The translations under genes were made by a program, and so were the position numbers. A model generated the notes under the pieces. It made no database searches and was not told the origin of the DNA. It saw only the letters and a program-made list of their open reading frames with translations. DNA of 64,000 nucleotides from IMG/VR virus record IMGVR_UViG_3300017991_000048, positions 1 to 64,000 of that record; one strand, given 5' to 3'. Below are positions 28,355-62,177 of this stretch, in pieces. How positions within the stretch are numbered: position 1 is the stretch's first letter; each line of letters opens with the position of its first letter.

Positions 28355-28606
28355 ATGGAAGTTTTCAGACGCTTGTCAAACCCACCTTCTAAGTGGCATG
28401 TAGCCAACCCGGACGACGGGACAATAGCACTCTGTGGGTGGCACACAAACCCTGACGGAAATTCTGATTATATAAAACAGGCGATCGAAGTTTTCGAAAG
28501 CCACGCAATACCCGACGACAACCCCAGTGAGATATACTGCCATAACTGTCTACGAAAACGAAGAAAGGCTCTGAAAGACCTCTGGGATCACTTGTCCGAA
28601 AGTTGA
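28355..28606 (+). CDS. Zn-finger protein with LWDHL tag
   Basis: WH......LCG...CHNC; ends DLWDHLSES. Confidence 0.8.
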   Translation: MEVFRRLSNPPSKWHVANPDDGTIALCGWHTNPDGNSDYIKQAIEVFESHAIPDDNPSEIYCHNCLRKRRKALKDLWDHLSES

Positions 28607-28627
28607 TTAAATCAACTTGGTGTAATT

Positions 28628-28849
28628 GTGTCAGAACCTCCAAAATGCAAATGCGGAAAAACTCTTGATCTGTGGCCTGCTCGACACCATACCTTTCGAA
28701 CCTTCACCTCAACCCGAAAAAGCTTTTTACCCCCGACCTACGTTTGCACCAGATGCCATCTATCTTATCCAATAGATCACTTCGATACCAAAAACCTCTG
28801 GGAACATTTATCTGAGGACTCAAATGGCAAAAAAACTCAAAACAAGTGA
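28628..28849 (+). CDS. Zn-ribbon protein with LWEHL tag
   Basis: CKCG...CTRC; NLWEHLSED. Confidence 0.7.
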   Translation: MSEPPKCKCGKTLDLWPARHHTFRTFTSTRKSFLPPTYVCTRCHLSYPIDHFDTKNLWEHLSEDSNGKKTQNK

Positions 28850-29321
28850 CTTTTTCAACACCGCTGTCTCCAGAGACCTCGCTCAGGCTGTTGAAGTTAT
28901 TAAAGCTCAAGAGCAGACTGTTCAGGCTGTTAAAGCTCAAGCTGTTAAGGTTCAAGCCTACACACCCGCCACAGACTTCCAGACGGTTTACGCTACTGAA
29001 AACCCCTTCCATACAACGGAAGAGGGCGAAGTTAGGCGTCTAAGCCCTAAGAAACAAGGAGCCCAAAAAACGCTCGAAAAGTATAGACACAGTGTGCTGA
29101 AAGGTTACCCACGCGGAGAGACGGTAGAGAAATACTATAGAGCGGCTGTTATCTTAGACGAAGAACTGGACCACGACATTGAACTCGATCATATAAGATT
29201 GCTCTTGCGTGTTATTGACAAACTGCGAAACGAGCTTGATGTTGATACCCCCGGTGAACCGCCGCCTAAGAAGAGAAAGGCAAACGACCTTTGGGGCCAT
29301 CTTACCAACGATGAAGAATGA
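28824..29321 (+). CDS. Hypothetical protein with LWGHL tag
   Basis: Ends NDLWGHLTNDEE. Confidence 0.75.
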   Translation: MAKKLKTSDFFNTAVSRDLAQAVEVIKAQEQTVQAVKAQAVKVQAYTPATDFQTVYATENPFHTTEEGEVRRLSPKKQGAQKTLEKYRHSVLKGYPRGETVEKYYRAAVILDEELDHDIELDHIRLLLRVIDKLRNELDVDTPGEPPPKKRKANDLWGHLTNDEE

Positions 29322-29836
29322 ACCGTTACGAACTTGAAGAACTCTTAGAAGATGAAGACCGCATAGGCTTGGCAGTTTCACCCTGTAATGATGAGCCGCG
29401 TCTGTGGACTCATCACACTGGCCTTGTCGTTGGTGATCCTTACAATCAAACCGTTCTTGCCTTCTTTTGTATTTACGGCCAAAGAGCGGTTCAGATGCAC
29501 AACTGGCTGCAATCGTTAGACGTGTTCTCCTCCGATTTAATCCCCGAATCGGTAAACTTTCAAGGTCGTGTGTATGGCGATAGAGAGTCAATAGAAGTTG
29601 CTTGCTACCGATGTTATAAAGTTACTCGGATAACACCCACCCGGCTGATCACCAGGAACATACCATGTGGCTGTGCCGCTGGCACTTTTGGCCCTATTCA
29701 CTTGGTCAGATTTATAGACCTACCCAGGCCAGGGATTGAAGATTATGTCCCTTACTTGCAGCAGCGAGAAGGCAGGACACCAGAAACGACACCGGAACCT
29801 GAACTCGACTATTATGAATGTGTGAAAGACGATTAG
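29318..29836 (+). CDS. Hypothetical protein
   Basis: 172 aa, CYRC...CGC; tail LDYYECVKDD may be a degenerate tag. Confidence 0.7.
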   Translation: MNRYELEELLEDEDRIGLAVSPCNDEPRLWTHHTGLVVGDPYNQTVLAFFCIYGQRAVQMHNWLQSLDVFSSDLIPESVNFQGRVYGDRESIEVACYRCYKVTRITPTRLITRNIPCGCAAGTFGPIHLVRFIDLPRPGIEDYVPYLQQREGRTPETTPEPELDYYECVKDD

Positions 29837-29839
29837 GCT

Positions 29840-30307
29840 TTACCACTTGGTTCGGTTTTCATCCCGACCGGTAGAGCCTTCGGGGTAATGTATTGTGCCC
29901 TTCCATCCGGGCCAGAAGGGTTTCCAGGAATCGAGCCCTCTCCAAAGATACGTCTTTTCGCCCCAATCTCCGTAAGAAGCGCTACTCTCCATGTCGTAGG
30001 CTTTTGATCCCTTAATATAGCCCGAAGGGGTTTTAAGACCCATATACTCAAAAATGTCATCTGAGGCTAAATCGGCAAGAAGAGCATCTCTTGAAATAGG
30101 ACCGGGGTAGTTCTGTTCCAGTTTCTCTGGCTTGTTATAAAACGTACCATAAATAATACGAGCGGGTTTGGCGGTCGCCTGAAGTCCTTTGACTATCTTC
30201 CTGGGATCTCTGGCTCCATCCAGGGCTCTTTCCTCTTTCAAGAGTTTCTCAAATGTTTTTCGTAGCCGTCCAATGGTCTTGTCCCGGTTAGTTACGTAAC
30301 GCTCCAT
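29840..30307 (-). CDS. Hypothetical protein
   Basis: 155-aa ORF, converges on 29836. Confidence 0.65.
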   Translation of the reverse strand: MERYVTNRDKTIGRLRKTFEKLLKEERALDGARDPRKIVKGLQATAKPARIIYGTFYNKPEKLEQNYPGPISRDALLADLASDDIFEYMGLKTPSGYIKGSKAYDMESSASYGDWGEKTYLWRGLDSWKPFWPGWKGTIHYPEGSTGRDENRTKW

Positions 30308-30712: not shown

Positions 30713-30859
30713 ATGCGAGCATTCCTCCAAAACCTATACAAGAGGTACCAGCGATGGAAATGCCGCAGGGACTTCTCAAAGCTCCGTAAGAATGAACAAA
30801 AACTGTTTACATGGTTGGGGTACGACCCGGAAACTCTGATCCGAAGGGGAAAGCTGTAA
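30713..30859 (+). CDS. Small basic protein
   Basis: ATG just after CGGTGTAATA box; 3' part of ORF 30311..30859. Confidence 0.5.
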   Translation: MRAFLQNLYKRYQRWKCRRDFSKLRKNEQKLFTWLGYDPETLIRRGKL

Positions 30860-30864
30860 ACGAT

Positions 30865-31149
30865 ATGGACAGGATACCTGAAACCATAATGTTTGGGGGT
30901 AAAGAACGGAAGGTCGAGCCGGGTTGGAGCAACTGGTATAAAATCCGCATTGGAAAGCTAGGAACGCTGGATATCCATGATTGCGGCAAATCCGGGTTTC
31001 AAGCCTTTTGCAATACAATTATCCCAAGGTGCAACGCCCAAGGATTCACGTTCCACGAGGCCGTCAGCAGCCTGGAAATAGCGATGAATGACTACCTTGA
31101 GGCTCTAGGTGTGGAACTCGGCTACGTGAGTTTTGATAAAAGCCGTTGA
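30865..31149 (+). CDS. P.T.MFGG.ERKV family protein (HicB-like C-half)
   Basis: Paralogous to 52169..52711 and 54776..55042; FTFHEAVSSLE. Confidence 0.7.
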   Translation: MDRIPETIMFGGKERKVEPGWSNWYKIRIGKLGTLDIHDCGKSGFQAFCNTIIPRCNAQGFTFHEAVSSLEIAMNDYLEALGVELGYVSFDKSR

Positions 31150-31320
31150 TCCGGAACTTTATTATATCAAATGCTGACGGGAACAATTTTGCTTGTTAGC
31201 GAAATCATTTACTTTTTTGTCCAGAAATTTTTATTTTCGTGTAAATTGTTGAGATCGGTCCTGTTTTCGGTGTAGTAGATACTGTCAACCTTTTGGCGTA
31301 GGGCCAGAAAGAAAATGTAA

Positions 31321-35344: not shown

Positions 35345-35388
35345 TACCCAAGGCTTTACACCAAAACAAGATGAGAAACTTGATAAAA

Positions 35389-35637
35389 TCAAGTTTCCCG
35401 AATCACACTCCAGAGGGTCACATCGTCACCTCTCTCACACTCGATCAGAGCAACCACGTCCGGGTGATGCCCCAAATGGCGAAGAATCCGATTGCCGTAC
35501 TTCTTACACCTGTGGTGCTGGAAGGCCGCGCCCACTCTGTGCTGCCCCTCTTCTTTGGGGCTGAGGTGTTTACAGTCAGACTCACATAAGCTGTGTGGTT
35601 TGGCCAAACGGCTACAGAAATCGCAAGATACAGGCAT
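35389..35637 (-). CDS. Cys/His-rich protein with LWSVI tag variant
   Basis: Paralog of 61812..62099 (C..DC.HL.P.E..Q....H.C.KYG); ends TLWSVIRET. Confidence 0.7.
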   Translation of the reverse strand: MPVSCDFCSRLAKPHSLCESDCKHLSPKEEGQHRVGAAFQHHRCKKYGNRILRHLGHHPDVVALIECERGDDVTLWSVIRET

Positions 35638-35666: not shown

Positions 35667-36188
35667 ATGAGCGGGATACGACAGCGAGTGGCCGAACGGT
35701 ATTTAACCGGTGGGGCCAAAAGGCCAGAAGACCTCAAAAGGGAGGGCTGGCGTATTGAGCTTCGTGATGAAGGTTATGCCATTCTTATTTTGTTGTTTTC
35801 AGAAAAAGGCGGTGAGCTAGGGGGTCTTAGAATGCGATACCGCAACGAATGCAAGAGTTGGGAGGTTATGAACAGCAAGGCTCCGTCTGGCTTTGGGCCA
35901 TTATTATATGACCTCGCCATGGAATGGGCCGGGGACAAAGGTATTATACCCGATCGAGATAATGTTAGCGCCGATGCCCGGAACATCTGGAAACACTATT
36001 ATGACAAACGGCGAGATGTTTGGAAGTTCGACCTTGGAAATGAGCCTATCAATTGTGAAATGCACGAGCGTTATGAAGGAGACCTCTGGGAAAAAAATAT
36101 GGAATGGTTAGATTTCCGCTTTGTTGCCAAATCCAAGAAGGTGCTCCCGAAGCTCAAAGCCTTGGGTTTGTTCAAATACAAGAGTTGA
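35667..36188 (+). CDS. GNAT-like protein with N-terminal RVAERYL motif
   Basis: GFGPLLYDLAMEW..IIPDR.NVSADARNIW. Confidence 0.65.
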   Translation: MSGIRQRVAERYLTGGAKRPEDLKREGWRIELRDEGYAILILLFSEKGGELGGLRMRYRNECKSWEVMNSKAPSGFGPLLYDLAMEWAGDKGIIPDRDNVSADARNIWKHYYDKRRDVWKFDLGNEPINCEMHERYEGDLWEKNMEWLDFRFVAKSKKVLPKLKALGLFKYKS

Positions 36189-36200
36189 TTAAATCAAGTT

Positions 36201-36884
36201 ATGAGACTAACCCCGCAAAAAATTGTGGCCCGTTATGCGGCATCCCGGCCCAAGCTCTTCCTTTATAAAAGCGCCGATCAAATCGCTGTCAATTTGGGAA
36301 CGGACACAGAAGTTGGCTACTTGTTGCTTGGCCCAGTATCGTCAGTAAAGTCCAAATGCGAGTCTTTGGTAGAAGAGATCCAAAGAGAAGTCTTCGGAAG
36401 TAAGCCTGTACCACTGTGGCACGTAACCGATGTTCAACTGGACCCTGAGTTTCGAGGAAAGGGGTGGGGCCTCAAGATGTACGAGAAAGCCTTACGTGCA
36501 GCCCGTCCCGCAATCATCGTGTCCGGTGACTGTATAGGATATGGAACAACCGTTGTTTCTGACCCGATAATGCCGGGATTCTGTTCTTTGCTGTGCTTCA
36601 CAGCATGGCGGCAGAGTCTCAAAAACACGCATAAAGAACTGTGTCCAGCGGAGTCTAAGATTACTGATGAGTATGGCAGAAAAGCCCGTACTCTAACTTG
36701 CCACCTGCCTAGAGGTCATAAAGGCAGACACGCGGTGGAAATGAGTTGGTACGAAAAAGAGAACGTGATGCGCTCTCACGACATTGTGATTACCTGGGCA
36801 GGCGATGACTTACAAGAGGTCGATAATACCGGAGAGCCTTTGCCAAAAGATAAAGACCTGTGGGACCACCTGAGTGAAGCTTGA
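36201..36884 (+). CDS. Chimeric GNAT-like / Cys-His protein with LWDHL tag
   Basis: KIVARY N-terminus, LDPEFRGKGWGLKMY GNAT loop, FCSLLC and C.LPRGH.G.H, ends DLWDHLSEA. Confidence 0.7.
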   Translation: MRLTPQKIVARYAASRPKLFLYKSADQIAVNLGTDTEVGYLLLGPVSSVKSKCESLVEEIQREVFGSKPVPLWHVTDVQLDPEFRGKGWGLKMYEKALRAARPAIIVSGDCIGYGTTVVSDPIMPGFCSLLCFTAWRQSLKNTHKELCPAESKITDEYGRKARTLTCHLPRGHKGRHAVEMSWYEKENVMRSHDIVITWAGDDLQEVDNTGEPLPKDKDLWDHLSEA

Positions 36885-36918
36885 TCTTATCAAGTAAAAC
36901 CGCTATTTCATCAAACTT

Positions 36919-37185
36919 ATGGAAACGGCTGAGATATTCGATGTGGTGGAGCGTAACGGTGATATTGTCCTGACCACCGAAAGCCTCAAGCCCGGAGATT
37001 TGGTGCTTCACTGGCCCAGTGGCGAGGTTTATGAGTTTTCTCATTTTTCTCAGAACTCAGCCAAACTTGATGTACGTAAAGACCTTCTGGTGTGCAAGCG
37101 TCCCTACCAAGCCTTTCCGATAAGGGAGATGAGACGGGTTATTTCCTACAAGACCCTCTGGGACCACCTGAGCGAGAGAACTTGA
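36919..37185 (+). CDS. Small protein with LWDHL tag
   Basis: LKPGDLV SH3-like start; ends TLWDHLSERT. Confidence 0.75.
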   Translation: METAEIFDVVERNGDIVLTTESLKPGDLVLHWPSGEVYEFSHFSQNSAKLDVRKDLLVCKRPYQAFPIREMRRVISYKTLWDHLSERT

Positions 37186-37257
37186 TTTTATCAAGTTTTT
37201 AGTGCAATCTTATCAACTTTTTGATAAAACGGTGTACTATTCACCCAGGAGGTTTTT

Positions 37258-38118
37258 ATGAGTAACTACGACAGCCCTGTATGGACCACACATGAGGATA
37301 ACAAGCTTACCATCCTTCGTGAAAAAGGTCTTACATTTGAACAAATCGCCAAACGTATGAAAGGTCGGTCCTCTGCCGGGTGTAATACTCGTTATGGAAG
37401 ACTAAAAAGGGCAAAGACAAAACCAAGCGCGAGGGCAAAAAAAGGAAAAGGTGCTCGACCGAAACCATGGACTCCCGCAGAAGACCAACTAATTACTGAA
37501 CTACGTGAGAAGGGCTGGTCTTTCCCGAAAATTTCCATAGAACATAATAAACGGTTCCCAAAAATCCCTCGTTCTACTCCTGGCTGTTGGGCGCGATATG
37601 AAAAGTTGAAAAGAAAGAAAGCAGTGACTAATTCTGCTGCTGTGCTCGATGGGCTGGCTACAAAGGAGGAGCAGCCACAAGTTCAGCCACAAGAGCGGGG
37701 CGGGTTATCTTTTCCGGGGCTAATAGCTAAGGTAATGGGAACAAAAGCCATGGACAATACAGAGATTGTGAAGGCTTTAAAAGCGAGTGGTGAGACACTA
37801 CCTTTAAGTAATAATTTGCCTGGTTATGTCTGTTCGGTCCTCAGCGGTCAAAGAAATCCTGACGGGAGCCGAAAGTTTAAGGCCGTTTCAAGAGGTGTGT
37901 ATCAAGTCGCCCCAAACACTGTCTTTAACAGTGTTCCTCCAAAGCCCAGGCCCAAAAAGAAAAAGGACCACCCTCATGTTCCAAAAAACGGAGCTTGGAA
38001 CATGAGTATAGATTCCGAGACAGGCTCTTTGAAGGTAGTGTTAGATGGCGATTTTTGTACCCAAGAAATTCAGAATAAAATCAAGAAGCTTCTTGGGAGT
38101 ATTGTAGCTGGTCAGTAA
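37258..38118 (+). CDS. Tandem Myb/SANT-like plus winged-helix DNA-binding protein
   Basis: WTTHEDNKL...F.QIA..M.GRS...C..RY and WTPAEDQLI...PRS...CWARY; C-terminal FKAVSRGVY wing. Confidence 0.7.
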   Translation: MSNYDSPVWTTHEDNKLTILREKGLTFEQIAKRMKGRSSAGCNTRYGRLKRAKTKPSARAKKGKGARPKPWTPAEDQLITELREKGWSFPKISIEHNKRFPKIPRSTPGCWARYEKLKRKKAVTNSAAVLDGLATKEEQPQVQPQERGGLSFPGLIAKVMGTKAMDNTEIVKALKASGETLPLSNNLPGYVCSVLSGQRNPDGSRKFKAVSRGVYQVAPNTVFNSVPPKPRPKKKKDHPHVPKNGAWNMSIDSETGSLKVVLDGDFCTQEIQNKIKKLLGSIVAGQ

Positions 38119-39308
38119 TGGCACACATATCTCGAATACGGCGGCAGAAAGAATTAACAGCCCACAAGGAGTTATTCCCCTACTTGCCAATAGAGGATCA
38201 AAGATTGCTCCGCTTTTATCTTCAAGAAAAGTGTAGCCAAGCGAGCCTCGCGGCAAAATTTAATACGCCGCAGTCAACAATACATTACCGTTTAACCAGG
38301 ATAGCCAAGCGCTTAGAGTTTCTGAAGTACTTTCCTATACTTTCCAAAACAGAACTCGAAAAACTATTTCACTCAATCGGAGTAGACTCTAAGACCGTAC
38401 AGATGATGGCGGCGTTGTACTTAACCACAAGTCAAGCCAGTGCTGCTAAAGAAGTTGGCTGCGGCCTAAGTGTAATTGCTTACAACCAACGAAAAACAAT
38501 TGCTTTGCTTCATAAATTAGTGGCAGCGGGAGCGTGGGACTACGAGCCCCTTTTGCGTGGTATGCTCATGATCAAAGACAATTACAAACTTCTGTGTAAG
38601 CCACAAAGAGAGGCCATTCGCAATGTATGGGCGGATAAAACATTAGACCAGATGAAAGACATTATTCTTGAGCACTTTTATGGTACAGGAAATTGGCCTA
38701 GCTCAAAAACCTCTCTAAAATTCAGATCCTTGGCTGAAACGCTTCGTAAATACAGAGGGACTTCATTGTCAAAACTCGTGGAGGAACTTGGTGGCCCTAA
38801 GGCAAGACCAACTATTTTATATGTTGGTCTTTCGCCCGAAAAGCGGAAACTGATTAAATTCTTGCCTAAAACAGAGCAAGATATGATTCGGGCTTATTAT
38901 ATCAAAGGTTTGAAGCAGGAACAGATCAGCCTGAAACATGATATGACACAGGCAGCGGTATCATATCGCTTAAAAACAGCCCATAAACGATTGGAGTTTT
39001 TGCTAAAATTTCCTATTCTGGAAAGGGATGAAATCACGAGAGTCTTGGAGTCAGCCGATTTCTTACCGGAATCTATACAGATATTGATAGCTTTATATGA
39101 GACTACTAGCCAAAGTGCTACTGCTAAGAGACTGGGGGTTTCACAAGGAAAGGTCAGGTGGCATCTCCATAATGCAATAAAGACGCTTGAGCCTCTTGTC
39201 GCTTCCGGTCGGGAAGACCTTAAAGATGTTCTGTTGGGGCTGACAATGGTTCGGGATTGGAGTGGGGCACTTCACTCTTACCCTCATTCAAAATTTAGCC
39301 GGGGCTAA
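38118..39308 (+). CDS. Internally duplicated multi-HTH (sigma70 region-4-like) regulator
   Basis: Two copies of [LP..(D/E)Q.....Y......Q......Q..(I/V).YRL....KRLEFL..FP + second HTH TSQ...AK..G]. Confidence 0.7.
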   Translation: MAHISRIRRQKELTAHKELFPYLPIEDQRLLRFYLQEKCSQASLAAKFNTPQSTIHYRLTRIAKRLEFLKYFPILSKTELEKLFHSIGVDSKTVQMMAALYLTTSQASAAKEVGCGLSVIAYNQRKTIALLHKLVAAGAWDYEPLLRGMLMIKDNYKLLCKPQREAIRNVWADKTLDQMKDIILEHFYGTGNWPSSKTSLKFRSLAETLRKYRGTSLSKLVEELGGPKARPTILYVGLSPEKRKLIKFLPKTEQDMIRAYYIKGLKQEQISLKHDMTQAAVSYRLKTAHKRLEFLLKFPILERDEITRVLESADFLPESIQILIALYETTSQSATAKRLGVSQGKVRWHLHNAIKTLEPLVASGREDLKDVLLGLTMVRDWSGALHSYPHSKFSRG

Positions 39309-39361
39309 AAAATTCCAGATTTGCAAATAAGGGGTGGGTTTATAATTTAGACCCCCATACC

Positions 39362-39871
39362 TTGATTTTATCAACTTTTATTGCTATTTCATCAAGGTTT
39401 CAAACTTTCATCGATCGGTGTCCACGCGCATGATGGACGAGCCAATTCCGTGCCAATGGCATCATAAAAAAGATAAGCAAGCGGTTCTGTGTTTTTCCCC
39501 AATTTGATCAAGTTCCAGACCCCCCTCCCCCGGTAGGTGATCGACAACACACTGAGTCCGAGTTCGTGCCTACGGCACTCACTTGTGGACAGAGTTCTGT
39601 TTACCTTTTTTATTTTTCCTATTGAGATAATACTTGATATAATCAAGTTATCTTTTATATGATCAAGTTCACGGGCGTTACAGCACTTGATATAATCAAG
39701 TTTGCGTTATGCTATATTATCAAGTTCTAATCATGGCTAGTTCGCTGACGGTCGCTGACACGCAGGCACCCCCTCCCCCTTACCCCCTCCCCTGCCTATG
39801 AGCGTGTGTACCCATGGGGGTTGATTTAATCAACTTTGTCTTTTCCGGTGTATGGACCTTGATATAATCAA
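39362..39871. promoter_or_regulatory. Cluster of TTGAT-N3-ATCAA palindromic operators
   Basis: Perfect copies at 39362, 39634, 39687, 39821, 39859 plus half sites. Confidence 0.75.
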
Positions 39872-39894
39872 CTCTCACCCCCTATGGAGGACAG

Positions 39895-44331: not shown

Positions 44332-44332
44332 T

Positions 44333-44940: not shown

Positions 44941-44941
44941 T

Positions 44942-45658: not shown

Positions 45659-45662
45659 ATTG

Positions 45663-45691: not shown

Positions 45692-45695
45692 GCTT

Positions 45696-47086: not shown

Positions 47087-47089
47087 GGT

Positions 47090-47502
47090 TTATTTAATCA
47101 AGTTTCGGGTTTTCTCAATCTCGACAATACGAAGTAACTCGTTAGCGATCGCCTCAACTTTGAAGCCAGCTTTCGGCTCCCTGAAGCTCTTACGGCCCTT
47201 CTTGATCCAGCCGTAGCCTATCGAAATGAGCATCTTACCGTTCCAAACGATATCAATGGGGTGATGCCCACTTTTTTCTGCATCCTGACAGTCAGGAACT
47301 CTCGGACGTCAACACCGTCAATATGTAAAGGCGGCTTATAGCCGTCGATAGCGACCGGAAGCATGGCTTCCCCCATGTCCGGGCTGTGGCCGTTGCTTTC
47401 GAGGTGGCTGACAAGCCGGTCCATAAAAGCAGCCAGCCGGGTACGGGCTTCAGCCTCAAGTACCTTGTTCTGCTCCCACTGTATCTGTGTTGAACCGTTC
47501 AC
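47090..47502 (-). pseudogene. Hypothetical protein with two apparent frameshifts
   Basis: ORF 47218..47502 continues out of frame as SGHHPIDIVWNGK...KSFREPKAGFK then VEAIANELLRIVEIE*. Confidence 0.55.
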
Positions 47503-47516
47503 TGTTGCCTCTATTT

Positions 47517-47545
47517 ATATTACAGTTGAGCGACACGATCCTCTA
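47517..47545 (-). promoter_or_regulatory. Phage promoter class I
   Basis: TAGAGG-N17-TAATAT before GTG 47502. Confidence 0.72.
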
Positions 47546-47612
47546 GTTGATTTAATCAAGTTCCCAAAAATATAGACGCCGGGGCGCTCGCAGGCTGACA
47601 GGTTTATTTATT

Positions 47613-47740
47613 GGACCGAACCGACCGGGTGGTTTGTATAGGACCGACTGGATCGGACCGAACTGACTGGACCGAACCGACCGGAGTGACCGGATGGTTT
47701 ATAGGCCGACTGGACCTACAGGGATCTATCGGACCAACAG
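47613..47740. repeat. GGACCGAAC(C/T)GAC(C/T)-type short tandem repeats
   Basis: Three 14-mers plus GGACC/GACT fragments inside a twice-repeated ~45-60-nt block. Confidence 0.75.
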
Positions 47741-48245
47741 GCGATCTCGGATGCGTCAGCATCCGGTAGCAGAGATCCGACCAACGGTGCGCTCCTGCCG
47801 CTTCGCGGCGTCGAGCATACCGTGGGTATCTTTCCTGCTCGCCTACTTGATTTTATCAAGTTTACGATTTTTATTTTTCCTACTTGATAATATAAAGTTC
47901 GACATGCGTTTCGTGCTACTATTATAGCGCGAAACTTGATTTTATCAAGTTTATCATTTTTATAGAAAAAATAAATCCTCACCTGCTCGGTGGGCGCTCG
48001 TGACAACGGATTTTTTCAGTGGGAAAGGTCGTCCGTGTACATACAAAAATACCGCTGTCGCTGTAATCTAAGTATGTGAATTTGCGGGACTTTCGTGCCA
48101 AAAATCGTGCCAAGTTTTTGCGTCCGATTTTCCAGAATTTTCTCAAAACACGCTTGCAATTTTCAGAACTTGATTAAATCAAGTTTCCGGTGTAATACTC
48201 GGATATGAAGCCCGTGAACTACGACATTGAACTTGATATCAACCT

Positions 48246-48577: not shown

Positions 48578-48610
48578 GGTGTAATACTTGATTATATCAA
48601 GTATTACACC
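48578..48610. promoter_or_regulatory. Perfect 33-bp palindrome (two GGTGTAATA boxes around an operator)
   Basis: GGTGTAATACTTGAT-TAT-ATCAAGTATTACACC between divergent genes. Confidence 0.8.
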
Positions 48611-49212: not shown

Positions 49213-49244
49213 TTTTTTTAATTCCCAACTTGATTTCATCAACT

Positions 49245-50964: not shown

Positions 50965-51672
50965 ATGGACCTACACCCCCTCTATCTCGAAGGCACCGAA
51001 CTTGACGACTGGGCTGTCAATAACGACCCTGACCCCGCCTTGTATTACAAGACAGCCATGGAAGCTCAAATTCAGAAACTTGAAGCTATCAGCGTCATTC
51101 TCCCGGACTTTGCCAATGCAGGCGTTCCCCCACGGGTTGTGGGGCATCACATTTCCAAGTCCGTCAAACTTCCTGTCACTTGCTTTATGTTCAGTCTTGA
51201 AGGCTTTGAGGCATTCGCTTTTATCCGGGACAATTTCCATGATATCAAGGTCGTGGTTGTTTCCGACGTTCCGGTCCACATCCCCTATTCCGTTGTCCAC
51301 ATCGAATGGACTCAAGAGCATTATGATTCCGAACTCAAAAGCTTCAGCGAGTACCTCTCAGATGAAACTCTGGGTCCAGAAGACGCTCGTAAGCGTAAAG
51401 ACCTGATCGCGTCCGGAACCGACGATTGGTACAAGCAATGGTCTTCTGGGACCATTTTACGTAAGGAAGGCCACATATATCGTGCCGGTAGCCACCAATC
51501 TCACTATTGTGAGGGTATCCGGGAACTCGGATTGGAGGAGTCCGTGTTCAAACCTTACGAGGCCGGTGACAAGGCTTTCGTCTGTGAGGTCTATTCTTAT
51601 TCCACCGTCGCCACAATTTTGGAGTGTATTATTAGCTCCCTCGATATGGCCGAATCTCTGGAGCAGGAATAA
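50965..51672 (+). CDS. Hypothetical protein
   Basis: GGTGTAATT box upstream; VVGHH.SKSVKLP. Confidence 0.75.
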   Translation: MDLHPLYLEGTELDDWAVNNDPDPALYYKTAMEAQIQKLEAISVILPDFANAGVPPRVVGHHISKSVKLPVTCFMFSLEGFEAFAFIRDNFHDIKVVVVSDVPVHIPYSVVHIEWTQEHYDSELKSFSEYLSDETLGPEDARKRKDLIASGTDDWYKQWSSGTILRKEGHIYRAGSHQSHYCEGIRELGLEESVFKPYEAGDKAFVCEVYSYSTVATILECIISSLDMAESLEQE

Positions 51673-51711
51673 TTCTCTGGCCGAACGGTGTAATAGTTGA
51701 TAATATCACCT

Positions 51712-52194
51712 ATGCCTGTCTGCAAGCACTGCAATTCCAATATCCCCTATGAAGGGGGTGTGATCGTTTCCGGGAAGCTTGAATACTGCTCTTTGACGTG
51801 CTTTGCGGTGCGTGTGTTGGAACCTGACCCCACTGACGCAAATCCTAAAAACGAGCTTCACGGCGGGTGTGTAGTCTGTCAAAAGCTAATTTACAATGTA
51901 GGCCCGGTTCATATCCCTGACCCAGACGACGCCGGTATGTGGTTCTGCCCCGATTGCTGCCCACCCGATGAGATAGTTAAGAAGGTGCGTCTTCAGGACG
52001 GTGATTATTACGTCTGTACTCATTGTGGCATGAGGTATCTTATCTCTACCTTCCCTCTCTGGCTTTCCGCGTTTGATAACGGCGTTTATTGCAGTTTGGC
52101 CTGTAGGCAAGGCTCCAGGAATGGCATCCGGAAGCCGTCGCCTGCCAACCTTTGGGACCATCTAACCTTTGGAGGTTCAAGTGACCATACCTAA
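51712..52194 (+). CDS. Multi-Zn-finger (YCSxxC) protein with LWDHL tag
   Basis: Three CxxC/YCSLxC units; paralog of 62178. Confidence 0.75.
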   Translation: MPVCKHCNSNIPYEGGVIVSGKLEYCSLTCFAVRVLEPDPTDANPKNELHGGCVVCQKLIYNVGPVHIPDPDDAGMWFCPDCCPPDEIVKKVRLQDGDYYVCTHCGMRYLISTFPLWLSAFDNGVYCSLACRQGSRNGIRKPSPANLWDHLTFGGSSDHT

Positions 52195-52711
52195 AACCGT
52201 AATGTTCAAAGGCAAAAAGCGTAAAGTCAAAGCTTCTGCTGATGAGTGCGGCTCCTACACCGTCTCCCTTGGCAGTCAAGGCGTGATCCATGTCCGTAAG
52301 TACTTTTCCGGATTTGTAGCCCGGTGCAACGGGCGTAGCATTCAGGGTAATGGGATGTTCCGTCACACTTTCCAGGAAGCCGTCCAAAGCCTGGAAGAAA
52401 ACCTCTTACCTCAAACCATAATGTTTGGCGGCAAGAGACGTAAGGTTACTCCCGGACCCGTTATCATCTTTATTAATTTAGGTAAGGATTTGGGTGATAT
52501 CGAGGTACGTCCTTATCATTACGACTCCAAGTATCATATGCCTGACGGTGCCAGCAATTCCGGGTATTTCGCTCGATACGCCATGGGGAACACCGCTCAA
52601 GGAATAGTGAGAGGCGACACTTTCAGGGGAGCCGTCCAAAAACTTGAGGCGGAAGCACTCAAGTTTTTCAAGGCAATTGGTGCCGAACTTGGATATGAGG
52701 TTGAGGGTTAA
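52169..52711 (+). CDS. Tandem P.T.MF.GK.RKV family protein
   Basis: Two copies of the 30865/54776 domain. Confidence 0.75.
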   Translation: MEVQVTIPKTVMFKGKKRKVKASADECGSYTVSLGSQGVIHVRKYFSGFVARCNGRSIQGNGMFRHTFQEAVQSLEENLLPQTIMFGGKRRKVTPGPVIIFINLGKDLGDIEVRPYHYDSKYHMPDGASNSGYFARYAMGNTAQGIVRGDTFRGAVQKLEAEALKFFKAIGAELGYEVEG

Positions 52712-52910: not shown

Positions 52911-53165
52911 ATGAACTGCCTGACCTGTAATGAGCCAATTGGCCATACAATTTACTTCCGAAGGCGGGGCAATCATTCTGACCAGAAGGCCCTGCTTTAC
53001 TTCTGTTCCGGGCATTGCAGGTTCCGTGCCATTACAGAAGGCGGCTTCACCTCGTGTGATGGTTGCCTACGAACCCCTTCTTGTGACCCTCACTGTTCAT
53101 CGGGCCGGGGAACCAACTTCACAATCAAACCCATGACTCTTTGGGATTATCTGAGGCATTCTTAA
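52911..53165 (+). CDS. Zn finger with LWDYL tag
   Basis: CLTC...YFCSGHC; ends TLWDYLRHS. Confidence 0.75.
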   Translation: MNCLTCNEPIGHTIYFRRRGNHSDQKALLYFCSGHCRFRAITEGGFTSCDGCLRTPSCDPHCSSGRGTNFTIKPMTLWDYLRHS

Positions 53166-53218
53166 AACACACCGTCTTGCGATTCGGTGTAATACTTGAT
53201 AATATCCACAAGGTCATT

Positions 53219-53815
53219 ATGCCCGAACTGATCGTCACAGACTCCGATTTGAGCGACCGGACCAAGGTTGCCCCTTGTACTCTTTACGTGTGCAAAAGTG
53301 ACCGTCCTGCTACCAACGACGGGCTTTACTGGCGCGTAGTGTACACAATTTCGGCATGTGTGGACGATGTTTTGGGGCATTTCCACACGAAAGAGGATGC
53401 GATCAAGTTCGCTGAAGAGCTTTCGGACCCCAGAGAGTTCCTTGGACTCAAAGTTCAGAACGACCATTTTCGGCAAGAGATAGCCGAACGACAGGGGCAA
53501 TTAGAAGCTCTCAAAAACATAGCCGACGCTATGGTCCAGGAACTTAAGAAAAGACGCGCTCCACACCCGGACGATTCTGAAGGGTTTACAACAGCGTCCG
53601 AATTGAGTTTTGAGTTAACGCAGTTGCGTCTCGGAGCCTTTGACCCCGACTTTCCCAGGCTTCTAACTTTTCTTCTGAGGCATTACCAGGGCGCGGAAAG
53701 CCCTCTGGAGTTAAAGTTGCAAGTCGATTCCGTCTGGGACTGGTATCAAATCAAGCAAATCGAGGGCGATCCTAACTCACCTACATTGTGGGACCACCTA
53801 GAAAACAAGGAATAA
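53219..53815 (+). CDS. Helical-domain paralog (module A) with LWDHL tag
   Basis: GLYWRVV module + ELKKRR...KLQVDSVW + TLWDHL. Confidence 0.8.
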   Translation: MPELIVTDSDLSDRTKVAPCTLYVCKSDRPATNDGLYWRVVYTISACVDDVLGHFHTKEDAIKFAEELSDPREFLGLKVQNDHFRQEIAERQGQLEALKNIADAMVQELKKRRAPHPDDSEGFTTASELSFELTQLRLGAFDPDFPRLLTFLLRHYQGAESPLELKLQVDSVWDWYQIKQIEGDPNSPTLWDHLENKE

Positions 53816-60071: not shown

Positions 60072-60729
60072 ACCCGAAAGTGTTAAGATCTTTGATGTTG
60101 AGTTCTCCAAGGAGGAGGGCTCCACACTCTATACTTCTGACTCTTTCGACGGGTGGGTCGAGGTTTGGGAAGTGCAGTATAAGATCGAGGTCAGTCTCCG
60201 CATCGAGAAACGTATCATCGGGTCTTCTGGGGATACCTTGGAAGAAGCGATCGAGAGCCTCGAAAACTTGGTAGAAAGGATTTGGGCTGGACTTCACAAG
60301 GTCGTCACCTCCAAATGGGGCTCTTCCAAACCTTATTTAGGTCGGATAGCCGAACTCGAAGGGAAAGTTAAATCACTTGAGGCTATGCTTTCGGGGTATC
60401 AAAGACGTGATACCGAGTGGCAAACTCTTGCCGACGATCTTTACAAGGCCATGCGAGCCAGGAGACAAGTAGTACCCGCTGACAATCGTGTGATATCAGA
60501 GTTTATCGAGCTTTTACGCAGAGAGTATGAGATTCTGTTAGACGGTGCCGCTTGGCAGCCGACTTTTACTCAGATTCAAGGGCAACTTGAGAACATCTAC
60601 CAATGTGACCCCGCGAGTGCCCCTGAACGTAAACGAGCGATAGACAGTGTTTGGGAGCTTGCTCAATTAAAGCTCGCTCTCGCTGGCTACCGCACAACCC
60701 TTTGGGAGCACTTGAACGGTGATAGTTGA
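60064..60729 (+). CDS. Module B plus helical-domain paralog with LWEHL tag
   Basis: VKIFDVEF..YTSD..WVEV, GDTLEEAIESLE; KRAIDSVW. Confidence 0.8.
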   Translation: MIRPESVKIFDVEFSKEEGSTLYTSDSFDGWVEVWEVQYKIEVSLRIEKRIIGSSGDTLEEAIESLENLVERIWAGLHKVVTSKWGSSKPYLGRIAELEGKVKSLEAMLSGYQRRDTEWQTLADDLYKAMRARRQVVPADNRVISEFIELLRREYEILLDGAAWQPTFTQIQGQLENIYQCDPASAPERKRAIDSVWELAQLKLALAGYRTTLWEHLNGDS

Positions 60730-60931
60730 TTGCTCATACGATGAAATCAACTACTGGTTTTACACGGTCTGGTTCCAGGAAAAACGGAGAGTGGTTCTCG
60801 GATACTGTGAGAACACAGACGGGAAGCATCCCATGGTTTATGTGGATGAAGAGTGGCTGGAACCAAGGGGCTGGATAGCCAGAACATTCGTCAACTGTAT
60901 TGGACGATACCTGAAGTGGGCACAATGCTAG
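60719..60931 (+). CDS. Small hypothetical protein
   Basis: Overlapping operon arrangement. Confidence 0.55.
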   Translation: MIVDCSYDEINYWFYTVWFQEKRRVVLGYCENTDGKHPMVYVDEEWLEPRGWIARTFVNCIGRYLKWAQC

Positions 60932-61305
60932 TTAGTATGGAGGATTTGATTATGAAAACCAAAAATGAGTCAGAACAAGATATCTTAAAGAGGAAGTACG
61001 GCAAGGTGTATGACCAGCTAATTAAAATGACAACTTTACTCCGATCCAGACGGGGCGAAAGGGAGTACGCCCCTGGCAACACTCCGTCAAATATCATTCA
61101 TAACACAATCGAGTGGGAGATAGATCAACTCAGAGGTGCCCCTAAAATTCCAGAGCTATTGAAATGGATAGAACAGTATTACAACTCACTCGATACTACT
61201 CAAGAGTTGATCGCCTTCAAACGGTTGCTTGACCGTCAGTGGGAAGAGCAATTGACAGAGAGCATGGGTAGCTCCAAGATTCTTTGGGATCATCTCACGG
61301 AGTAG
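60925..61305 (+). CDS. Helical-domain paralog with LWDHL tag
   Basis: LRSRR; KRLLDRQW; ILWDHLTE. Confidence 0.8.
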   Translation: MLVSMEDLIMKTKNESEQDILKRKYGKVYDQLIKMTTLLRSRRGEREYAPGNTPSNIIHNTIEWEIDQLRGAPKIPELLKWIEQYYNSLDTTQELIAFKRLLDRQWEEQLTESMGSSKILWDHLTE

Positions 61306-61311
61306 ATCGAA

Positions 61312-61815
61312 ATGCGACTGTTAGTTTTTGACGAAAAGTGTAGGTGTTCAAAAGGTTTTTTGATCCCTGTCAATACAGGCTTGCCTCAGCCATGCGATTG
61401 TCTTTCTGAGGCTGAATTTGACAAAGTAAAAGGCAAGCTGGAGCTTTGCGTCCAGTCGAGTTCCCCGTGGCGTGTTCTTGAATATCAGACCAAAGCTTTG
61501 GAAGATCAGCTTCGTACAATGCGTAACCAGCTTCGCAAGATTGTTAGGTTGCTTAGATTCAGGCGGGGTGTAGTTGACGCTGACTTTGATAAGGCGAGCA
61601 CTGATAGTTTGGCGCGGACTGAAATCCATGAGTTAGAACAGACTCCTGGATTTGCGGAAATACTAACGTCGTTGAATCGGTGTTATAAGAATGCCACGAC
61701 TGAAGATTTGACCCGGTATAAGCGCACCCTCGATGATCTTTGGGAAAAGTGGACAATAACACGCGGCTCTAAAGACCCAAAGGCACTATGGGACCATCTG
61801 CTCGACAACTCTTAG
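61312..61815 (+). CDS. Cys-motif helical-domain paralog with LWDHL tag
   Basis: CRC.KG...PCDC; LRFRR; KRTLDDLW. Confidence 0.8.
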   Translation: MRLLVFDEKCRCSKGFLIPVNTGLPQPCDCLSEAEFDKVKGKLELCVQSSSPWRVLEYQTKALEDQLRTMRNQLRKIVRLLRFRRGVVDADFDKASTDSLARTEIHELEQTPGFAEILTSLNRCYKNATTEDLTRYKRTLDDLWEKWTITRGSKDPKALWDHLLDNS

Positions 61816-62099
61816 GAATTTTTCAAGTGATCCCATAGTGTTATAATCTTGTCGCCGCACTCATCCTTGGCTATTATCATGTCACGAGAGCCGCCGACCG
61901 GGACACTTCCCCAGTGCGGCCAAGCGTGTTTGACTTCTCCCCCATATTTCATGCACAAATGGGGTGGTTTAGGCGACGGCATAGCCTTCTGTTCTGCTTC
62001 TGTCGGCTTCAGGTGTGGGCAGTCTGGTTTACATAATTTCGCCATGTTAGGCTCTGGGAAAGGCCATTTTAGGGGTAGAGGCGGGTAATGATACGCCAT
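61812..62099 (-). CDS. Cys/His-rich protein with LWDHL tag
   Basis: Paralog of 35389; GGTGTAATA box upstream. Confidence 0.8.
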   Translation of the reverse strand: MAYHYPPLPLKWPFPEPNMAKLCKPDCPHLKPTEAEQKAMPSPKPPHLCMKYGGEVKHAWPHWGSVPVGGSRDMIIAKDECGDKIITLWDHLKNS

Positions 62100-62177
62100 G
62101 TCTAATATATTACACCATCATTTGTGGTTTTTACACCAATTCCTTGCCGTTCGGTGTAACAGTTGATAATATCACCT

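What the first reader, a model, noticed from the sequence alone, without database searches (positions are those of the whole stretch)
28603..62176. Palindromic operator TTGAT-N3-ATCAA marks control regions and tagged-gene operons
Seen: at least 15 perfect copies (28603, 36185, 36881, 37182, 39362, 39634, 39687, 39821, 39859, 47547, 47847, 47936, 48170, 48588, 49230). Degenerate copies lie directly downstream of CGGTGTAA boxes at 51697, 53196 and 62164. Four copies embed the TGA stop of the upstream gene. None was noticed in 0-28 kb. Inference: binding site of one dimeric phage regulator controlling many tagged genes; the dense clusters could alternatively be replication iterons.
Basis: partly seen in the sequence, partly recalled or inferred. 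Interest (0 to 1): 0.6.

Follow-up and report, generated by a model that had tools for sequence, protein, structure and literature searches.

The report
Palindromic operator motif of a megaphage
A short DNA palindrome repeated about 25 times in one 36-kb stretch of a 398-kb uncultured phage genome is real and far beyond chance. It most likely marks where a gene-switch protein sits on the phage's own promoters, which is an ordinary kind of element, and its binding protein is still unknown.

Summary
The window is the first 64 kb of a 398,071-bp virus record, and 16 of its 18 perfect copies lie at 28.6-49.3 kb. A weight-matrix scan finds 25 of 27 sites at 12 bits or more inside 26-64 kb. The consensus extends to aaACTTGAT-www-ATCAAGTtt.

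Sites lie between genes or on gene junctions. Ten of 25 lie at -59 to +3 of start sites predicted from a GGTGTAAT box, which I show to be a clade-wide -10-only promoter giving leaderless mRNAs. Five of these sites are centred on +1, one of them inside a perfect 33-bp divergent promoter pair.

Imperfect copies keep one half-site and never compensate, which argues against an RNA hairpin. Five copies carry a second site, GCTAT-N3-ATCAA, 20-24 bp downstream. This bipartite unit recurs with the same spacing in a 411-kb relative.

Best reading (0.6): an operator of a dimeric, cooperatively binding regulator. The binder is not identified; candidates are 38118-39308, 37258-38118 and 25693-25938. The link to "tagged genes" is loose and the iteron reading is poorly supported. 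This is a new member of a known kind, of moderate interest.

The parts
28603..28615 (.). Perfect palindrome. It embeds the TGA stop of ORF 28355-28606 and is centred about -25 of the predicted start site of box 28619.
35380..35392 (.). It embeds the stop of the - strand ORF 35389-35637 and lies about -40 of the leftward box at 35362.
36185..36197 (.). Perfect palindrome. It embeds the stop of ORF 35667-36188 and ends 3 nt before ATG 36201. There is no SD and no box nearby.
36881..36914 (+). Bipartite unit: perfect palindrome 36881-36893 (embeds the stop of ORF 36201-36884), an 8-nt linker, then second site GCTATTTCATCAA at 36902-36914. ATG 36919 follows.
37182..37216 (+). Bipartite unit: perfect palindrome 37182-37194 (embeds the stop of ORF 36919-37185), then second site GCAATCTTATCAA at 37204-37216. 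An everted ATCAA/TTGAT pair follows, then box 37231. This is upstream of the regulator operon that starts at 37258.
37258..38118 (+). Candidate binder: 286-aa protein with two Myb/SANT-like repeats (residues 9-53 and about 70-118). It is an orphan in the protein database, with weak paralogues in G000 and homologues in G001.
38118..39308 (+). Candidate binder: 396-aa protein, an internal duplication of a module with two sigma-region-4-like HTHs (residues 17-155 and 235-390), so four HTHs in all.
39309..39894 (+). Non-coding hub A. It holds units at 39362-39395, 39634-39666 and 39687-39723. It also holds palindromes 39821-39833 and 39859-39871, which bracket box 39847 at about -35 and +3. All lie upstream of gene 39895-40761.
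47089..47101 (.). One-mismatch copy (TTTAT...ATCAA) upstream of the - strand gene 46426-47022.
47503..48245 (.). Non-coding hub B between divergent gene blocks. It holds perfect copies at 47547, 47847, 47936 and 48170 and a one-mismatch copy at 47884. Copy 48170 is centred about -28 of box 48189. A GGACCGA-repeat stretch lies at 47575-47845.
48578..48610 (.). Perfect 33-bp palindrome: GGTGTAATAC, then TTGATTATATCAA, then GTATTACACC. Two opposed boxes share one central site, which is centred on both predicted start sites. It lies between genes 48246-48554 (-) and 48624-48914 (+).
   Evidence: (I14)
49230..49242 (.). Perfect palindrome ending 2 nt before ATG 49245. There is no SD and no box.
51687..51709 (+). 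Box GGTGTAAT followed, 10 nt after its start, by one-mismatch copy TTGATAATATCAC, centred on the predicted +1. ATG follows at 51712.
53186..53208 (+). Box GGTGTAAT followed by one-mismatch copy TTGATAATATCCA, centred on the predicted +1. ATG follows at 53219.
62153..62175 (+). Box GGTGTAAC followed by one-mismatch copy TTGATAATATCAC at 62163, centred on the predicted +1. ATG follows at 62178. The divergent - strand gene 61812-62099 has its own boxes at 62116 and 62137.
26125..26137 (.). Weak copy (13-15 bits) at the convergent junction of ORFs 25917-26132 and 26134-26415. It marks the left edge of the motif domain.
31158..31170 (.). One-mismatch copy (TTTAT...ATCAA) in the gap after ORF 30811-31149.
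25693..25938 (+). Candidate binder: 81-aa winged-helix ORF, PadR-like (E 3e-5, below the Pfam cut-off). Its start codon sits at the leaderless position of box 25677.
26134..26415 (-). Weaker candidate binder: 93-aa ORF with weak MarR/winged-helix matches (E 4e-3).

Best explanation
The palindrome (consensus aaACTTGAT-www-ATCAAGTtt; half-site centres about one helical turn apart) is a DNA operator. A sequence-specific protein would bind it as a dimer. Where a second site lies 20-24 bp away, the protein would bind as a pair of dimers on one face of the helix.

Its targets are a subset of transcription units in the 26-62 kb part of a 398-kb phage genome. That part is packed with small genes. At six promoter instances the site covers the predicted start point of a GGTGTAAT (-10-only) promoter; one site serves two opposed promoters. 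At five others it covers the -25 to -59 region. A bound protein would therefore occlude RNA polymerase there.

Copies on gene junctions without a promoter could act as roadblocks. Copies massed in the two non-coding hubs (39.3-39.9 kb and 47.5-48.6 kb) could act as high-occupancy control regions. Hub A brackets the operon of the only clear multi-HTH proteins of the region, which is the usual layout of an autoregulated regulator.

Shown: the excess of the motif, its confinement to this region, its placement, its pattern of degeneracy, and its conservation in a relative. Inferred: that GGTGTAAT is the promoter and where transcription starts, that a protein binds, that the effect is repression, and which protein it is.
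For: (1) There are 16 copies against 0.10 expected. 25 of 27 matrix hits in the whole genome lie in 26-64 kb.

(2) Only 1 of 25 site centres falls inside a crudely called gene, although about 60% of the region is so called.

(3) GGTGTAA is a promoter. 22 of 94 boxes have an ORF-opening ATG 15-18 nt after the box start, against 2 for the reversed control. There is no -35 signal. The same box is the top upstream hexamer in relative G001 and is strand-biased upstream of genes in L123.

(4) 10 of 25 sites lie at -62 to +12 of a start site predicted from a box. The random mean is 1.4, and 0 of 5000 trials reach 10. Five share the identical register of box start + 10. One of these is the centre of a perfect 33-bp divergent promoter pair.

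(5) In 26-64 kb there are 11 copies with a mismatch in one arm, 4.4 times the density of the rest of the genome. There are 0 compensated double changes.

(6) Five copies in this phage and five in G001 carry a second site G(C/T)(T/A)AT-N3-ATCAA 20-24 bp away. It always lies on the downstream side with respect to local transcription. The unit at 39361-39396 and the G001 unit align block for block at the same 20-bp offset, each 16-bp block 15/16 identical, although the two phages' proteins are only 40-65% identical.

(7) The only clear multi-HTH proteins found in 24-50 kb are encoded at 37258-39308, between sites.
Against: No binding data and no transcript data exist; no RNA run holds the phage. 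Fifteen of 25 sites are not next to a recognisable box. Two of these (36185, 49230) abut a start codon that lacks an SD, which could equally point to an RNA-level or promoter role.

In G001 the units are not next to GGTGTA boxes, so the ancestral role of the unit may not be promoter occlusion.

The closest relative of the 38118 protein (L123, 21 kb) has boxes and tags but no palindrome at all. The fixed orientation of the bipartite unit relative to transcription is not required by a simple symmetric operator.
Confidence: 0.6

Rival explanations
1. RNA-level element. The palindrome acts as a hairpin in the transcript (5-10 bp stem, 3-nt loop). It could be a terminator or insulator at gene ends. 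It could instead be a site for a hairpin-specific RNA-binding protein or nuclease that controls translation, or that trims polycistronic RNA into leaderless mRNAs.
For: Five copies embed a stop codon, so they sit exactly at 3' ends of genes. T is frequent just downstream: 16/16, 12/16 and 11/16 at positions +14 to +16. Copies 47847 and 35380 look like hairpin plus T-run. Copies 36185 and 49230 end 2-3 nt before an ATG that lacks an SD, in a genome that clearly uses leaderless mRNAs.
Against: The sequence is conserved, not merely the pairing. 11 local variants break one arm and 0 are compensated. The stems are AT-rich with two G-C pairs. The terminator scan picked up only 35380 as such, while canonical GC-rich terminators exist nearby. 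At six promoter instances the predicted start lies inside the palindrome, so the RNA would carry only one arm. Copies also lie upstream of divergent promoters and in clusters of 5-6 in non-coding DNA.
Confidence: 0.12
2. Promoter element for host sigma-70-type polymerase. TTGAT(n) would serve as a -35 hexamer. The core TGAT-www-AT would serve as an extended -10 (TGnTATAAT when the spacer is ATA). In the bipartite unit the second site would supply TGcTATaTc as an extended -10, 17 bp after the -35. The element would then mark early host-transcribed promoters, and its palindromic shape would allow use in both directions.
For: Copies 39634, 39687 and 39859 (+ strand) and 48588 (- strand) contain a perfect TGATATAAT. 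The - strand at 47948-47921 reads TTGATA-16-TATAAT, 11 of 12. In units 36881 and 39362 and in all G001 units, the spacing from TTGAT(n) to TAT(a/t)T(c) is 17 bp. The unit always points in the direction of transcription.
Against: Only 3 of 32 site orientations give an acceptable -35/-10 pair, where I estimate about 2 by chance. The overall promoter-like count in 35-50 kb equals the shuffle expectation, 14 against 13.8. Most spacers put T, not A, at -11. The unit's '-10' mostly ends in C. This model does not explain the conserved right arm ATCAAG or the ATCAAG after the '-10'. In five promoters the palindrome lies downstream of the -10-like box.
Confidence: 0.1
3. Replication, partition or packaging site. 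The two dense clusters (and the two inverted clusters in G001) would be origin iterons, centromere-like sites or a pac region. They would be bound by an initiator, a centromere-binding protein or small terminase. The scattered single copies would be secondary.
For: There are two 0.6-1.1-kb non-coding hubs with 5-6 copies each, 8 kb apart. G001 has two inverted clusters 10 kb apart, with further palindromes and GC-rich hairpins. Hub B lies at a divergence of gene strands.
Against: The repeats are palindromes, not direct iterons. Spacing is irregular: 272, 20, 33, 24, 110, 38 in one hub and 458, 300, 37, 52, 234, 418 in the other. There is no excess of DnaA boxes, 16 against 14.2 expected, and none in the hubs. 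ParB_N is absent from the genome. GC skew follows gene strand and gives no origin signal. About half of the sites are single copies at promoters or gene junctions spread over 36 kb.
Confidence: 0.08
4. Same operator function, but read by a host transcription factor that the phage exploits rather than by a phage protein.
For: No phage protein can be tied to the site. Two phages with different GC content (48% and 44%) and largely different early genes share the core and the bipartite unit. The half-site equals that of the FNR/FixK box.
Against: The spacing is N3, not N4. Sites are confined to 9% of the genome, next to phage-encoded HTH proteins. No paper in the library holds such a motif. A scan of 185,579 prokaryote genomes for the bipartite unit gave only scattered single hits in unrelated taxa.
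Confidence: 0.1

Closest known systems
Temperate-phage repressor/operator arrays (lambda OR/OL, P22, 434)
   Same: Sites are short and twofold symmetric and overlap core promoters. Neighbouring sites are about two helical turns apart, which allows cooperative dimer pairs. One site sits between divergent promoters. Sites flank the genes of DNA-binding proteins.
   Different: There are about 25 sites spread over 36 kb and at least 12 intergenic places, not two tripartite operators. No Xre/cI-type repressor, integrase or lysogeny module was seen in the window. The promoters are -10-only GGTGTAAT boxes. The second site of the unit has a distinct conserved left arm (GCTAT).
FNR / FixK (Crp-Fnr family) box TTGAT-N4-ATCAA
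   Same: The 5-bp half-sites are identical and inverted.
   Different: The spacer is 3 bp in all 16 copies, and no N4 copy exists in the window. One bp less turns the half-sites by about 36 degrees, so a Crp-Fnr dimer is not expected to fit. No Crp-Fnr domain was found in the proteins scanned.
Phage N4 virion-RNA-polymerase hairpin promoters (5-7 bp stem, 3-nt loop); comparison recalled from my own knowledge
   Same: The geometry is the same: a 5-7 bp inverted repeat with a 3-nt spacer. In two cases an ATG lies 9-10 nt after the loop centre.
   Different: The loop sequence is not conserved and not purine-rich. The stems are AT-rich. No N4-like polymerase was looked for or seen. Many copies lie downstream of another promoter element. 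This remains a lead only.
Dispersed centromere/operator sites of linear plasmid-prophage N15 (SopB sites in promoter regions); comparison recalled from my own knowledge
   Same: Palindromic sites are dispersed over tens of kb and lie in promoter regions, so one protein could serve two roles.
   Different: No ParB/SopB-like N-terminal domain is encoded. There are far more copies, and there is no sign of a plasmid-prophage lifestyle.

Membership tests
Repressor-type operator of a dimeric DNA-binding regulator | Twofold-symmetric site, over-represented and confined to non-coding or promoter DNA | tested here: met
   16 copies against 0.10 expected. 25 of 27 matrix hits lie in 26-64 kb. Only 1 of 25 site centres falls in called coding sequence.
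Repressor-type operator of a dimeric DNA-binding regulator | Site overlaps core promoter elements or the start point | tested here: met
   10 of 25 sites lie at -62 to +12 of start sites predicted from GGTGTA boxes; random mean 1.4, 0 of 5000 trials reach 10. The start sites are predicted from leaderless geometry, not measured.
Repressor-type operator of a dimeric DNA-binding regulator | Weak copies lose one half-site rather than keeping base pairing | tested here: met
   11 one-arm variants and 0 compensated variants in 26-64 kb.
Repressor-type operator of a dimeric DNA-binding regulator | Cognate DNA-binding protein identified, encoded nearby and co-occurring with the site | tested here: inconclusive
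   HTH proteins at 37258-39308 are bracketed by sites. Myb-like homologues occur in G001 (which has sites) and not in G002 or G003 (which have none). However, the 38118 relative in L123 has no sites nearby.
Repressor-type operator of a dimeric DNA-binding regulator | Specific binding and an effect on transcription | not testable with these tools
   No RNA runs hold the phage. No protein-DNA modelling tool is on hand.
FNR/FixK box | TTGAT and ATCAA separated by 4 bp | tested here: not met
   N3 occurs 16 times and N4 0 times in the window.
Intrinsic (rho-independent) terminator | G+C-rich stem followed directly by a U-tract, with structure rather than sequence conserved | tested here: not met
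   The core stem has 1 G-C pair in 5, or 2 in 6-7 with the flanks. The consensus scan lists only the 35380 copy as such. There are no compensated variants.
Origin iterons | Tandem direct repeats at regular spacing next to an initiator gene, with an AT-rich unwinding element or DnaA boxes | tested here: not met
   The repeats are inverted and irregularly spaced. DnaA boxes are at the chance level. No initiator was recognised by Pfam in the flanking genes.
parS/ParB-type centromere | A ParB-family protein encoded by the replicon | tested here: not met
   PF02195 gives no match in the 398-kb record, while it is found in 10 of the 14 control genomes.
Sigma-70-type promoter (-35 / 16-18 bp / -10) | TTGAT(n) paired with a TAnnnT hexamer at 16-18 bp more often than chance | tested here: inconclusive
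   Three acceptable pairs use the palindrome as the -35, against about 2 expected by my estimate. Bipartite units have 17-bp spacing but a weak hexamer that ends in C.

The most novel reading that the evidence does not exclude
The conserved 34-36-bp bipartite unit has four half-sites: TTGAT / ATCAA / GCTAT / ATCAA. It may be read by proteins built only from sigma-region-4-like HTH domains. In this phage that would be the four-HTH protein 38118-39308, an internally duplicated, covalent 'dimer' of the clade's two-HTH factor. This would define a new class of megaphage regulators derived from sigma region 4. They would gate -10-only, leaderless GGTGTAAT promoters and organise the early region that encodes about 50 proteins with the C-terminal LWDHL tag.
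Probability: 0.12. Interest if true: 0.6.

Novelty: new member of a known kind. Interest (0 to 1): 0.38.

Why it matters
Gene regulation in uncultured phages of around 400 kb is almost unknown. This work gives a concrete, testable circuit with four parts:
- a clade-wide -10-only promoter (GGTGTAAT) with leaderless mRNAs;
- a palindromic site that sits on a defined subset of these promoters;
- a 36-bp bipartite unit conserved between two megaphages;
- a short list of candidate binders.

All of these can be synthesised and tested in vitro without culturing the phage. By itself a phage operator is an ordinary element. Its value is as an entry point to the early programme of this lineage, including the unexplained C-terminal LWDHL tag.

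Tried and rejected
- **Close relatives in the phage collection:** a near-identity search of 'phages' with 36-44 kb gave no match.
- **Protein-seeded locus searches:** searches of viral contigs with the 39895 and 38118 proteins found no relative.
- **Two-palindrome pattern in viral contigs:** more than 118 hits, all AT-rich chance hits with no extended flanks.
- **Bipartite-unit pattern:** in viral, metagenome and prokaryote collections it found only this phage and G001. The rest were single chance hits and one unrelated tandem-repeat contig, L168. L181, a contig of a human-gut metagenome among these hits, was not read or used.
- **Sequencing runs:** no RNA run holds the phage. 
- **Rfam:** nothing at gathering score in the window and nothing meaningful in the hubs.
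- **RNA folding:** 39396-39620 is not more stable than shuffles, z = -0.4.
- **Fold of the 38118 protein:** mean pLDDT 81, pTM 0.39. The PDB search gave only weak sigma-factor rows (E 0.03 or worse), so the arrangement of its domains is not known.
- **Pfam on about 70 ORFs of 24-50 kb and of the G001 hub flanks:** no further clear DNA-binding domain except two small winged-helix ORFs at 25.7-26.4 kb.
- **Hub collinearity:** short shared words between hub A and the G001 hub (TTTTCCCCAATTT and C-rich tracts) lie in opposite orientation relative to the unit, so I treat them as chance.
- **Literature:** no paper holds the motif in any of six spellings.
- **Not run:** Complex prediction, because I make no protein-protein binding claim.

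Full report
**What the window is.** The window is bases 1-64,000 of a 398,071-bp IMG/VR virus record. The record has direct terminal repeats, is rated complete and has 48.4% G+C. It has no near relative among deposited phage genomes. Essentially identical DNA occurs at low depth in sediment and seawater metagenomes of several studies, and no RNA run holds it. Bases 0-24 kb carry mostly - strand genes that match structural or virion PHROG families. From about 24 kb the window holds many small genes, mostly on the + strand, with one - strand block at 43.3-47.5 kb.

**Check of the observation.** TTGAT-N3-ATCAA occurs 16 times against 0.10 expected from dinucleotide shuffles.
- In the whole genome there are 18 copies, 16 of them at 28.6-49.3 kb. 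No other spacing is enriched; N4 occurs 0 times in the window.
- The 16 copies share more than the core. A at -2 (12/16), C/G at -1, G/C at +13 and T at +14 (16/16) give aaACTTGAT-www-ATCAAGTtt, and the spacer is almost only A/T.
- All eight copies of the 17-mer ACTTGAT-N3-ATCAAGT in the genome lie at 35-49 kb.
- A symmetrised matrix finds 27 sites at 12 bits or more, 25 of them in 26-64 kb. The reversed sequence gives 4 in the whole genome.
Each starts 10 nt after the start of a GGTGTAA box, at 51697, 53196 and 62163 (not 62164).
- Four copies embed the TGA of the upstream + strand ORF. A fifth (35380) embeds the stop of a - strand ORF.

**Where the sites lie.** Only 1 of 25 site centres lies inside a crudely called gene, and that call (53141-53815, TTG start) probably starts later, at ATG 53219. 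The rest lie in gaps, on gene junctions or in two long non-coding hubs at 39309-39894 and 47503-48245.

**The neighbouring GGTGTAAT box is a promoter.**
- Of 94 GGTGTAA in the genome, 22 have an ORF-opening ATG 15-18 nt after the box start (mode 16). The reversed word gives 2. Boxes with the ATG at 25-28 nt have an AGGAGG in between.
- No -35 signal accompanies the box.
- GGTGTA is the most enriched upstream hexamer both here and in the relative G001, where it reads CGGTGTAGTAAT with the ATG 16 nt after the start of the full CGGTGT word, 15 nt after GGTGTA. In the related contig L123 it occurs 13 times on the gene strand against 2 on the other.
- I therefore read it as a -10-only promoter whose transcripts start about 15-16 nt after the box start, often at the A of the ATG (leaderless). 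This is an inference from geometry and conservation, not a measured start.
- No Pfam RNA-polymerase beta or sigma region 2 is detectable in the genome, so the enzyme that reads the box is unknown.

**Sites relative to these promoters.** Ten of 25 sites lie at -62 to +12 of a predicted start. The random mean is 1.4, and none of 5000 trials reaches 10.
- Four boxes (48578, 51687, 53186, 62153) and the opposed box at 48610 have the palindrome in one register, box start + 10, so it is centred on +1.
- The 48588 copy is the centre of a perfect 33-bp palindrome made of two opposed boxes around one site. It lies between gene 48246-48554 (-) and gene 48624-48914 (+; the real start has a GGTGA Shine-Dalgarno).
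- Box 39847, upstream of the strongly codon-biased gene 39895, is bracketed by copies centred at about -35 and +3.
- Copies at 28603, 48170, 35380 (leftward box) and 37182 are centred at about -25, -28, -40 and -58 (rounded).

A protein on these sites would occlude the polymerase. If transcription starts where predicted, the RNAs of the +1 group contain only one arm of the palindrome.

**A bipartite unit, conserved in a relative.** Five copies (36881, 37182, 39362, 39634, 39687) are followed 20-24 bp later, start to start, by a second site G(C/T)(T/A)AT-N3-ATCAA(G).
- A structural protein of the window (465-1793) led to three large relatives. G001 (411,618 bp, 44% G+C, proteins 40-65% identical over a syntenic block) has 9 core copies. 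G002 (221 kb) has 0 and G003 (442 kb) has 1.
- Five G001 copies form the same unit: TTGATTTGATCAA, an 8-nt linker, then GCTATATCATCAAG. Three lie at 139.9-140.1 kb and two at 150.28-150.35 kb, in two non-coding hubs of opposite orientation. A sixth, partial copy lies at 186.7 kb.
- The unit at 39361-39396 and the G001 unit align block for block at the same 20-bp offset, with each 16-bp block 15/16 identical.
- In all ten units the second site lies on the downstream side with respect to local genes.
- Pattern scans of viral, metagenome and prokaryote collections found the unit repeatedly only in these two phages.
- L123 shares the boxes and the C-terminal tag with this phage. It has no palindrome in 21 kb and no other enriched palindrome.

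The element is therefore older than this genome but restricted to a narrow lineage. In G001 it is not tied to GGTGTA boxes.

**DNA site or RNA hairpin.** In 26-64 kb there are 11 copies with a mismatch in one arm, 4.4 times the density elsewhere, and none with a compensated pair change. The stems are AT-rich. The terminator scan lists only the extended 35380 palindrome, while ordinary GC-rich terminators occur nearby, for example at 39585-39615. Together with the +1 placement this favours recognition of the duplex sequence by a protein.

Some features still fit an RNA role: T-rich 3' flanks, stop-codon embedding, and the two copies that abut an ATG lacking a Shine-Dalgarno (36185, 49230). I keep that rival at about 0.12.

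**Iterons, partition, packaging.** Spacing inside the hubs is irregular. The repeat is inverted, not direct. DnaA boxes are at the chance level. No ParB domain is encoded. GC skew follows gene strand. Half of the sites are single copies at promoters or junctions over 36 kb. A second role for the hubs cannot be excluded, and I put it at about 0.08.

**Promoter reading.** Copies with an ATA spacer contain a perfect TGATATAAT. One - strand arrangement is 11 of 12 to the sigma-70 consensus. The units space TTGAT(n) and TAT(a/t)T(c) by 17 bp. Against this:
- promoter-like matches in 35-50 kb equal the shuffle expectation;
- most spacers put T at -11;
- the unit's hexamer ends in C;
- the model leaves the conserved right arm unexplained.

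I put it at about 0.10.

**Who binds.** Pfam and PHROG scans of about 60 ORFs at 24-50 kb of the window, plus ten ORFs flanking the G001 hubs, gave clear DNA-binding domains only for the following.
- **37258-38118:** two Myb/SANT-like repeats.
- **38118-39308:** Sigma70_r4 with E 1e-12, plus further HTH matches.
- **25693-25938 and 26134-26415:** two small winged-helix ORFs, PadR-like (E 3e-5) and MarR-like (E 4e-3).

The 38118 protein is an internal duplication of a two-HTH module. Residues 17-155 and 235-390 both align to the single module of its closest relative, P0002. It is a paralogue of a clade-wide two-HTH factor whose true orthologue lies at 326.2-326.8 kb, 75% identical to that of G001. 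Its model has good local confidence but an undefined domain arrangement, and it matches sigma factors only weakly.

The Myb-like protein has no relative in the 5.8-billion-protein search. It does have weak homologues in G001, and none in G002 or G003. The winged-helix ORFs have no G001 homologue.

The 37258-39308 operon is preceded by a unit plus extra half-sites and followed by hub A, as expected for an autoregulated regulator. I rate one of these two proteins as the binder at roughly 0.4-0.45, another phage protein at about 0.3-0.35 and a host factor at about 0.2-0.25. These figures are conditional on the site being a DNA operator at all, and none of them is tested.

**Link to 'tagged genes'.** 51 ORFs end in [T/D/N]-L-W-D/E-H-L plus 1-9 residues, 45 of them at 22-81 kb. 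L123 has three in 21 kb. G001 has only two, which is the chance level. Genes next to sites include tagged ones (36201, 36919, 48554 leftward, 51712, 53219) and untagged ones (37258, 39895, 48624, 49245). Most tagged genes have no site. The palindrome is therefore not a general mark of tagged genes.

**Comparison with what is known.** It works like a classical phage or bacterial operator, with the differences in copy number, promoter type and second-site arm set out under Closest known systems. Its half-sites equal those of the FNR/FixK box, but the spacer is one base shorter in every copy, so it is not that box. The resemblance to N4 hairpin promoters (5-7 bp stem, 3-nt loop) is a lead from memory only; the loop is not conserved. 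No paper in the library holds the motif.

**Verdict.** The feature is real, highly non-random and conserved. It is most likely an operator (0.6). It is a new member of a known kind, its binder is unidentified, and there are no expression data. Interest is moderate (0.38). The leaderless GGTGTAAT promoter and the LWDHL tag, seen in passing, are at least as notable as the palindrome itself.

Noticed in passing
G000 22,367-81,361 mainly (window 22-64 kb), e.g. ORF ends at 28606, 36884, 37185, 52194, 53815: 51 ORFs, mostly small and unrelated, end in a shared C-terminal peptide: [T/D/N]-L-W-D/E-H-L plus 1-9 residues, then stop. 45 of them lie at 22-81 kb. Three more occur in the related 21-kb contig L123. 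G001 has only 2, the chance level. No paper holds the motif. It may be a sorting, packaging or degradation tag for early proteins.
   Followed up: partly
genome-wide; in the window e.g. 27329, 28336, 30698, 48189, 50947: GGTGTAA(T) is a -10-only promoter-like box. 22 of 94 copies have an ORF-opening ATG 15-18 nt after the box start (control 2), which implies leaderless mRNAs. There is no -35. The same box is the top upstream word in G001 (CGGTGTAGTAAT) and is present in L123, but it is not enriched in G002 or G003. No Pfam RNA-polymerase beta or sigma region 2 is found in the genome.
   Followed up: partly
window 38118-39308; G000 326207-326845 (-): The 396-aa protein is a tandem duplication of a module with two sigma-region-4-like HTHs. 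The clade's single-module orthologue, 75% identical to that of G001, sits elsewhere at 326 kb. Homologues in other large phages lie between replication and structural genes.
   Followed up: partly
window 47575-47845: A GC-rich stretch of GGACCGA-type short repeats lies in the divergent non-coding hub. It folds better than all 100 shuffles (z = -3.0) and is followed by the 47847 palindrome and a T-run. It may be a structured non-coding RNA.
   Followed up: partly
L133 10040-10310 and L134 140-520 (G001 140.0-140.3 kb and 150.1-150.5 kb): The G001 hubs carry a second repeated palindrome, ATCTTTA-N4-TAAAGAT, in at least 7 copies. They also carry several GC-rich hairpins with CTTCGG loops between the units.
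   Followed up: no
window 35389-35637 (-), 61812-62099 (-); also 51712-52194 and 62178-62678: Cys/His-rich small paralogues sit next to palindromes. Two - strand paralogues share a G001 homologue at 163.6 kb. The + strand genes 51712 and 62178 share a near-identical promoter, operator and 5' end, so some sites spread by gene duplication.
   Followed up: partly
window 39895-40761: This 288-aa protein has the strongest codon bias in the window. It has a short helical N-terminus, a lysine-rich stretch and a long acidic PEPV-repeat tail. It is homologous to G001 131.9-132.9 kb and matches no family. Its promoter carries two palindromes, and three bipartite units lie further upstream in hub A.
   Followed up: no
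window 43804-46157 (-): The - strand block between the hubs encodes a ligase-domain fragment (PF01068), a DnaJ-domain protein and an AAA_33 kinase-like protein. This may be an RNA or DNA repair set.
   Followed up: no
G001 51252-52499 (-): A 416-aa open frame that reads like a TnpB/IS605 OrfB-type protein lies directly beside the two-HTH factor gene of G001. This is my own reading of the sequence; no family search was run on it.
   Followed up: no
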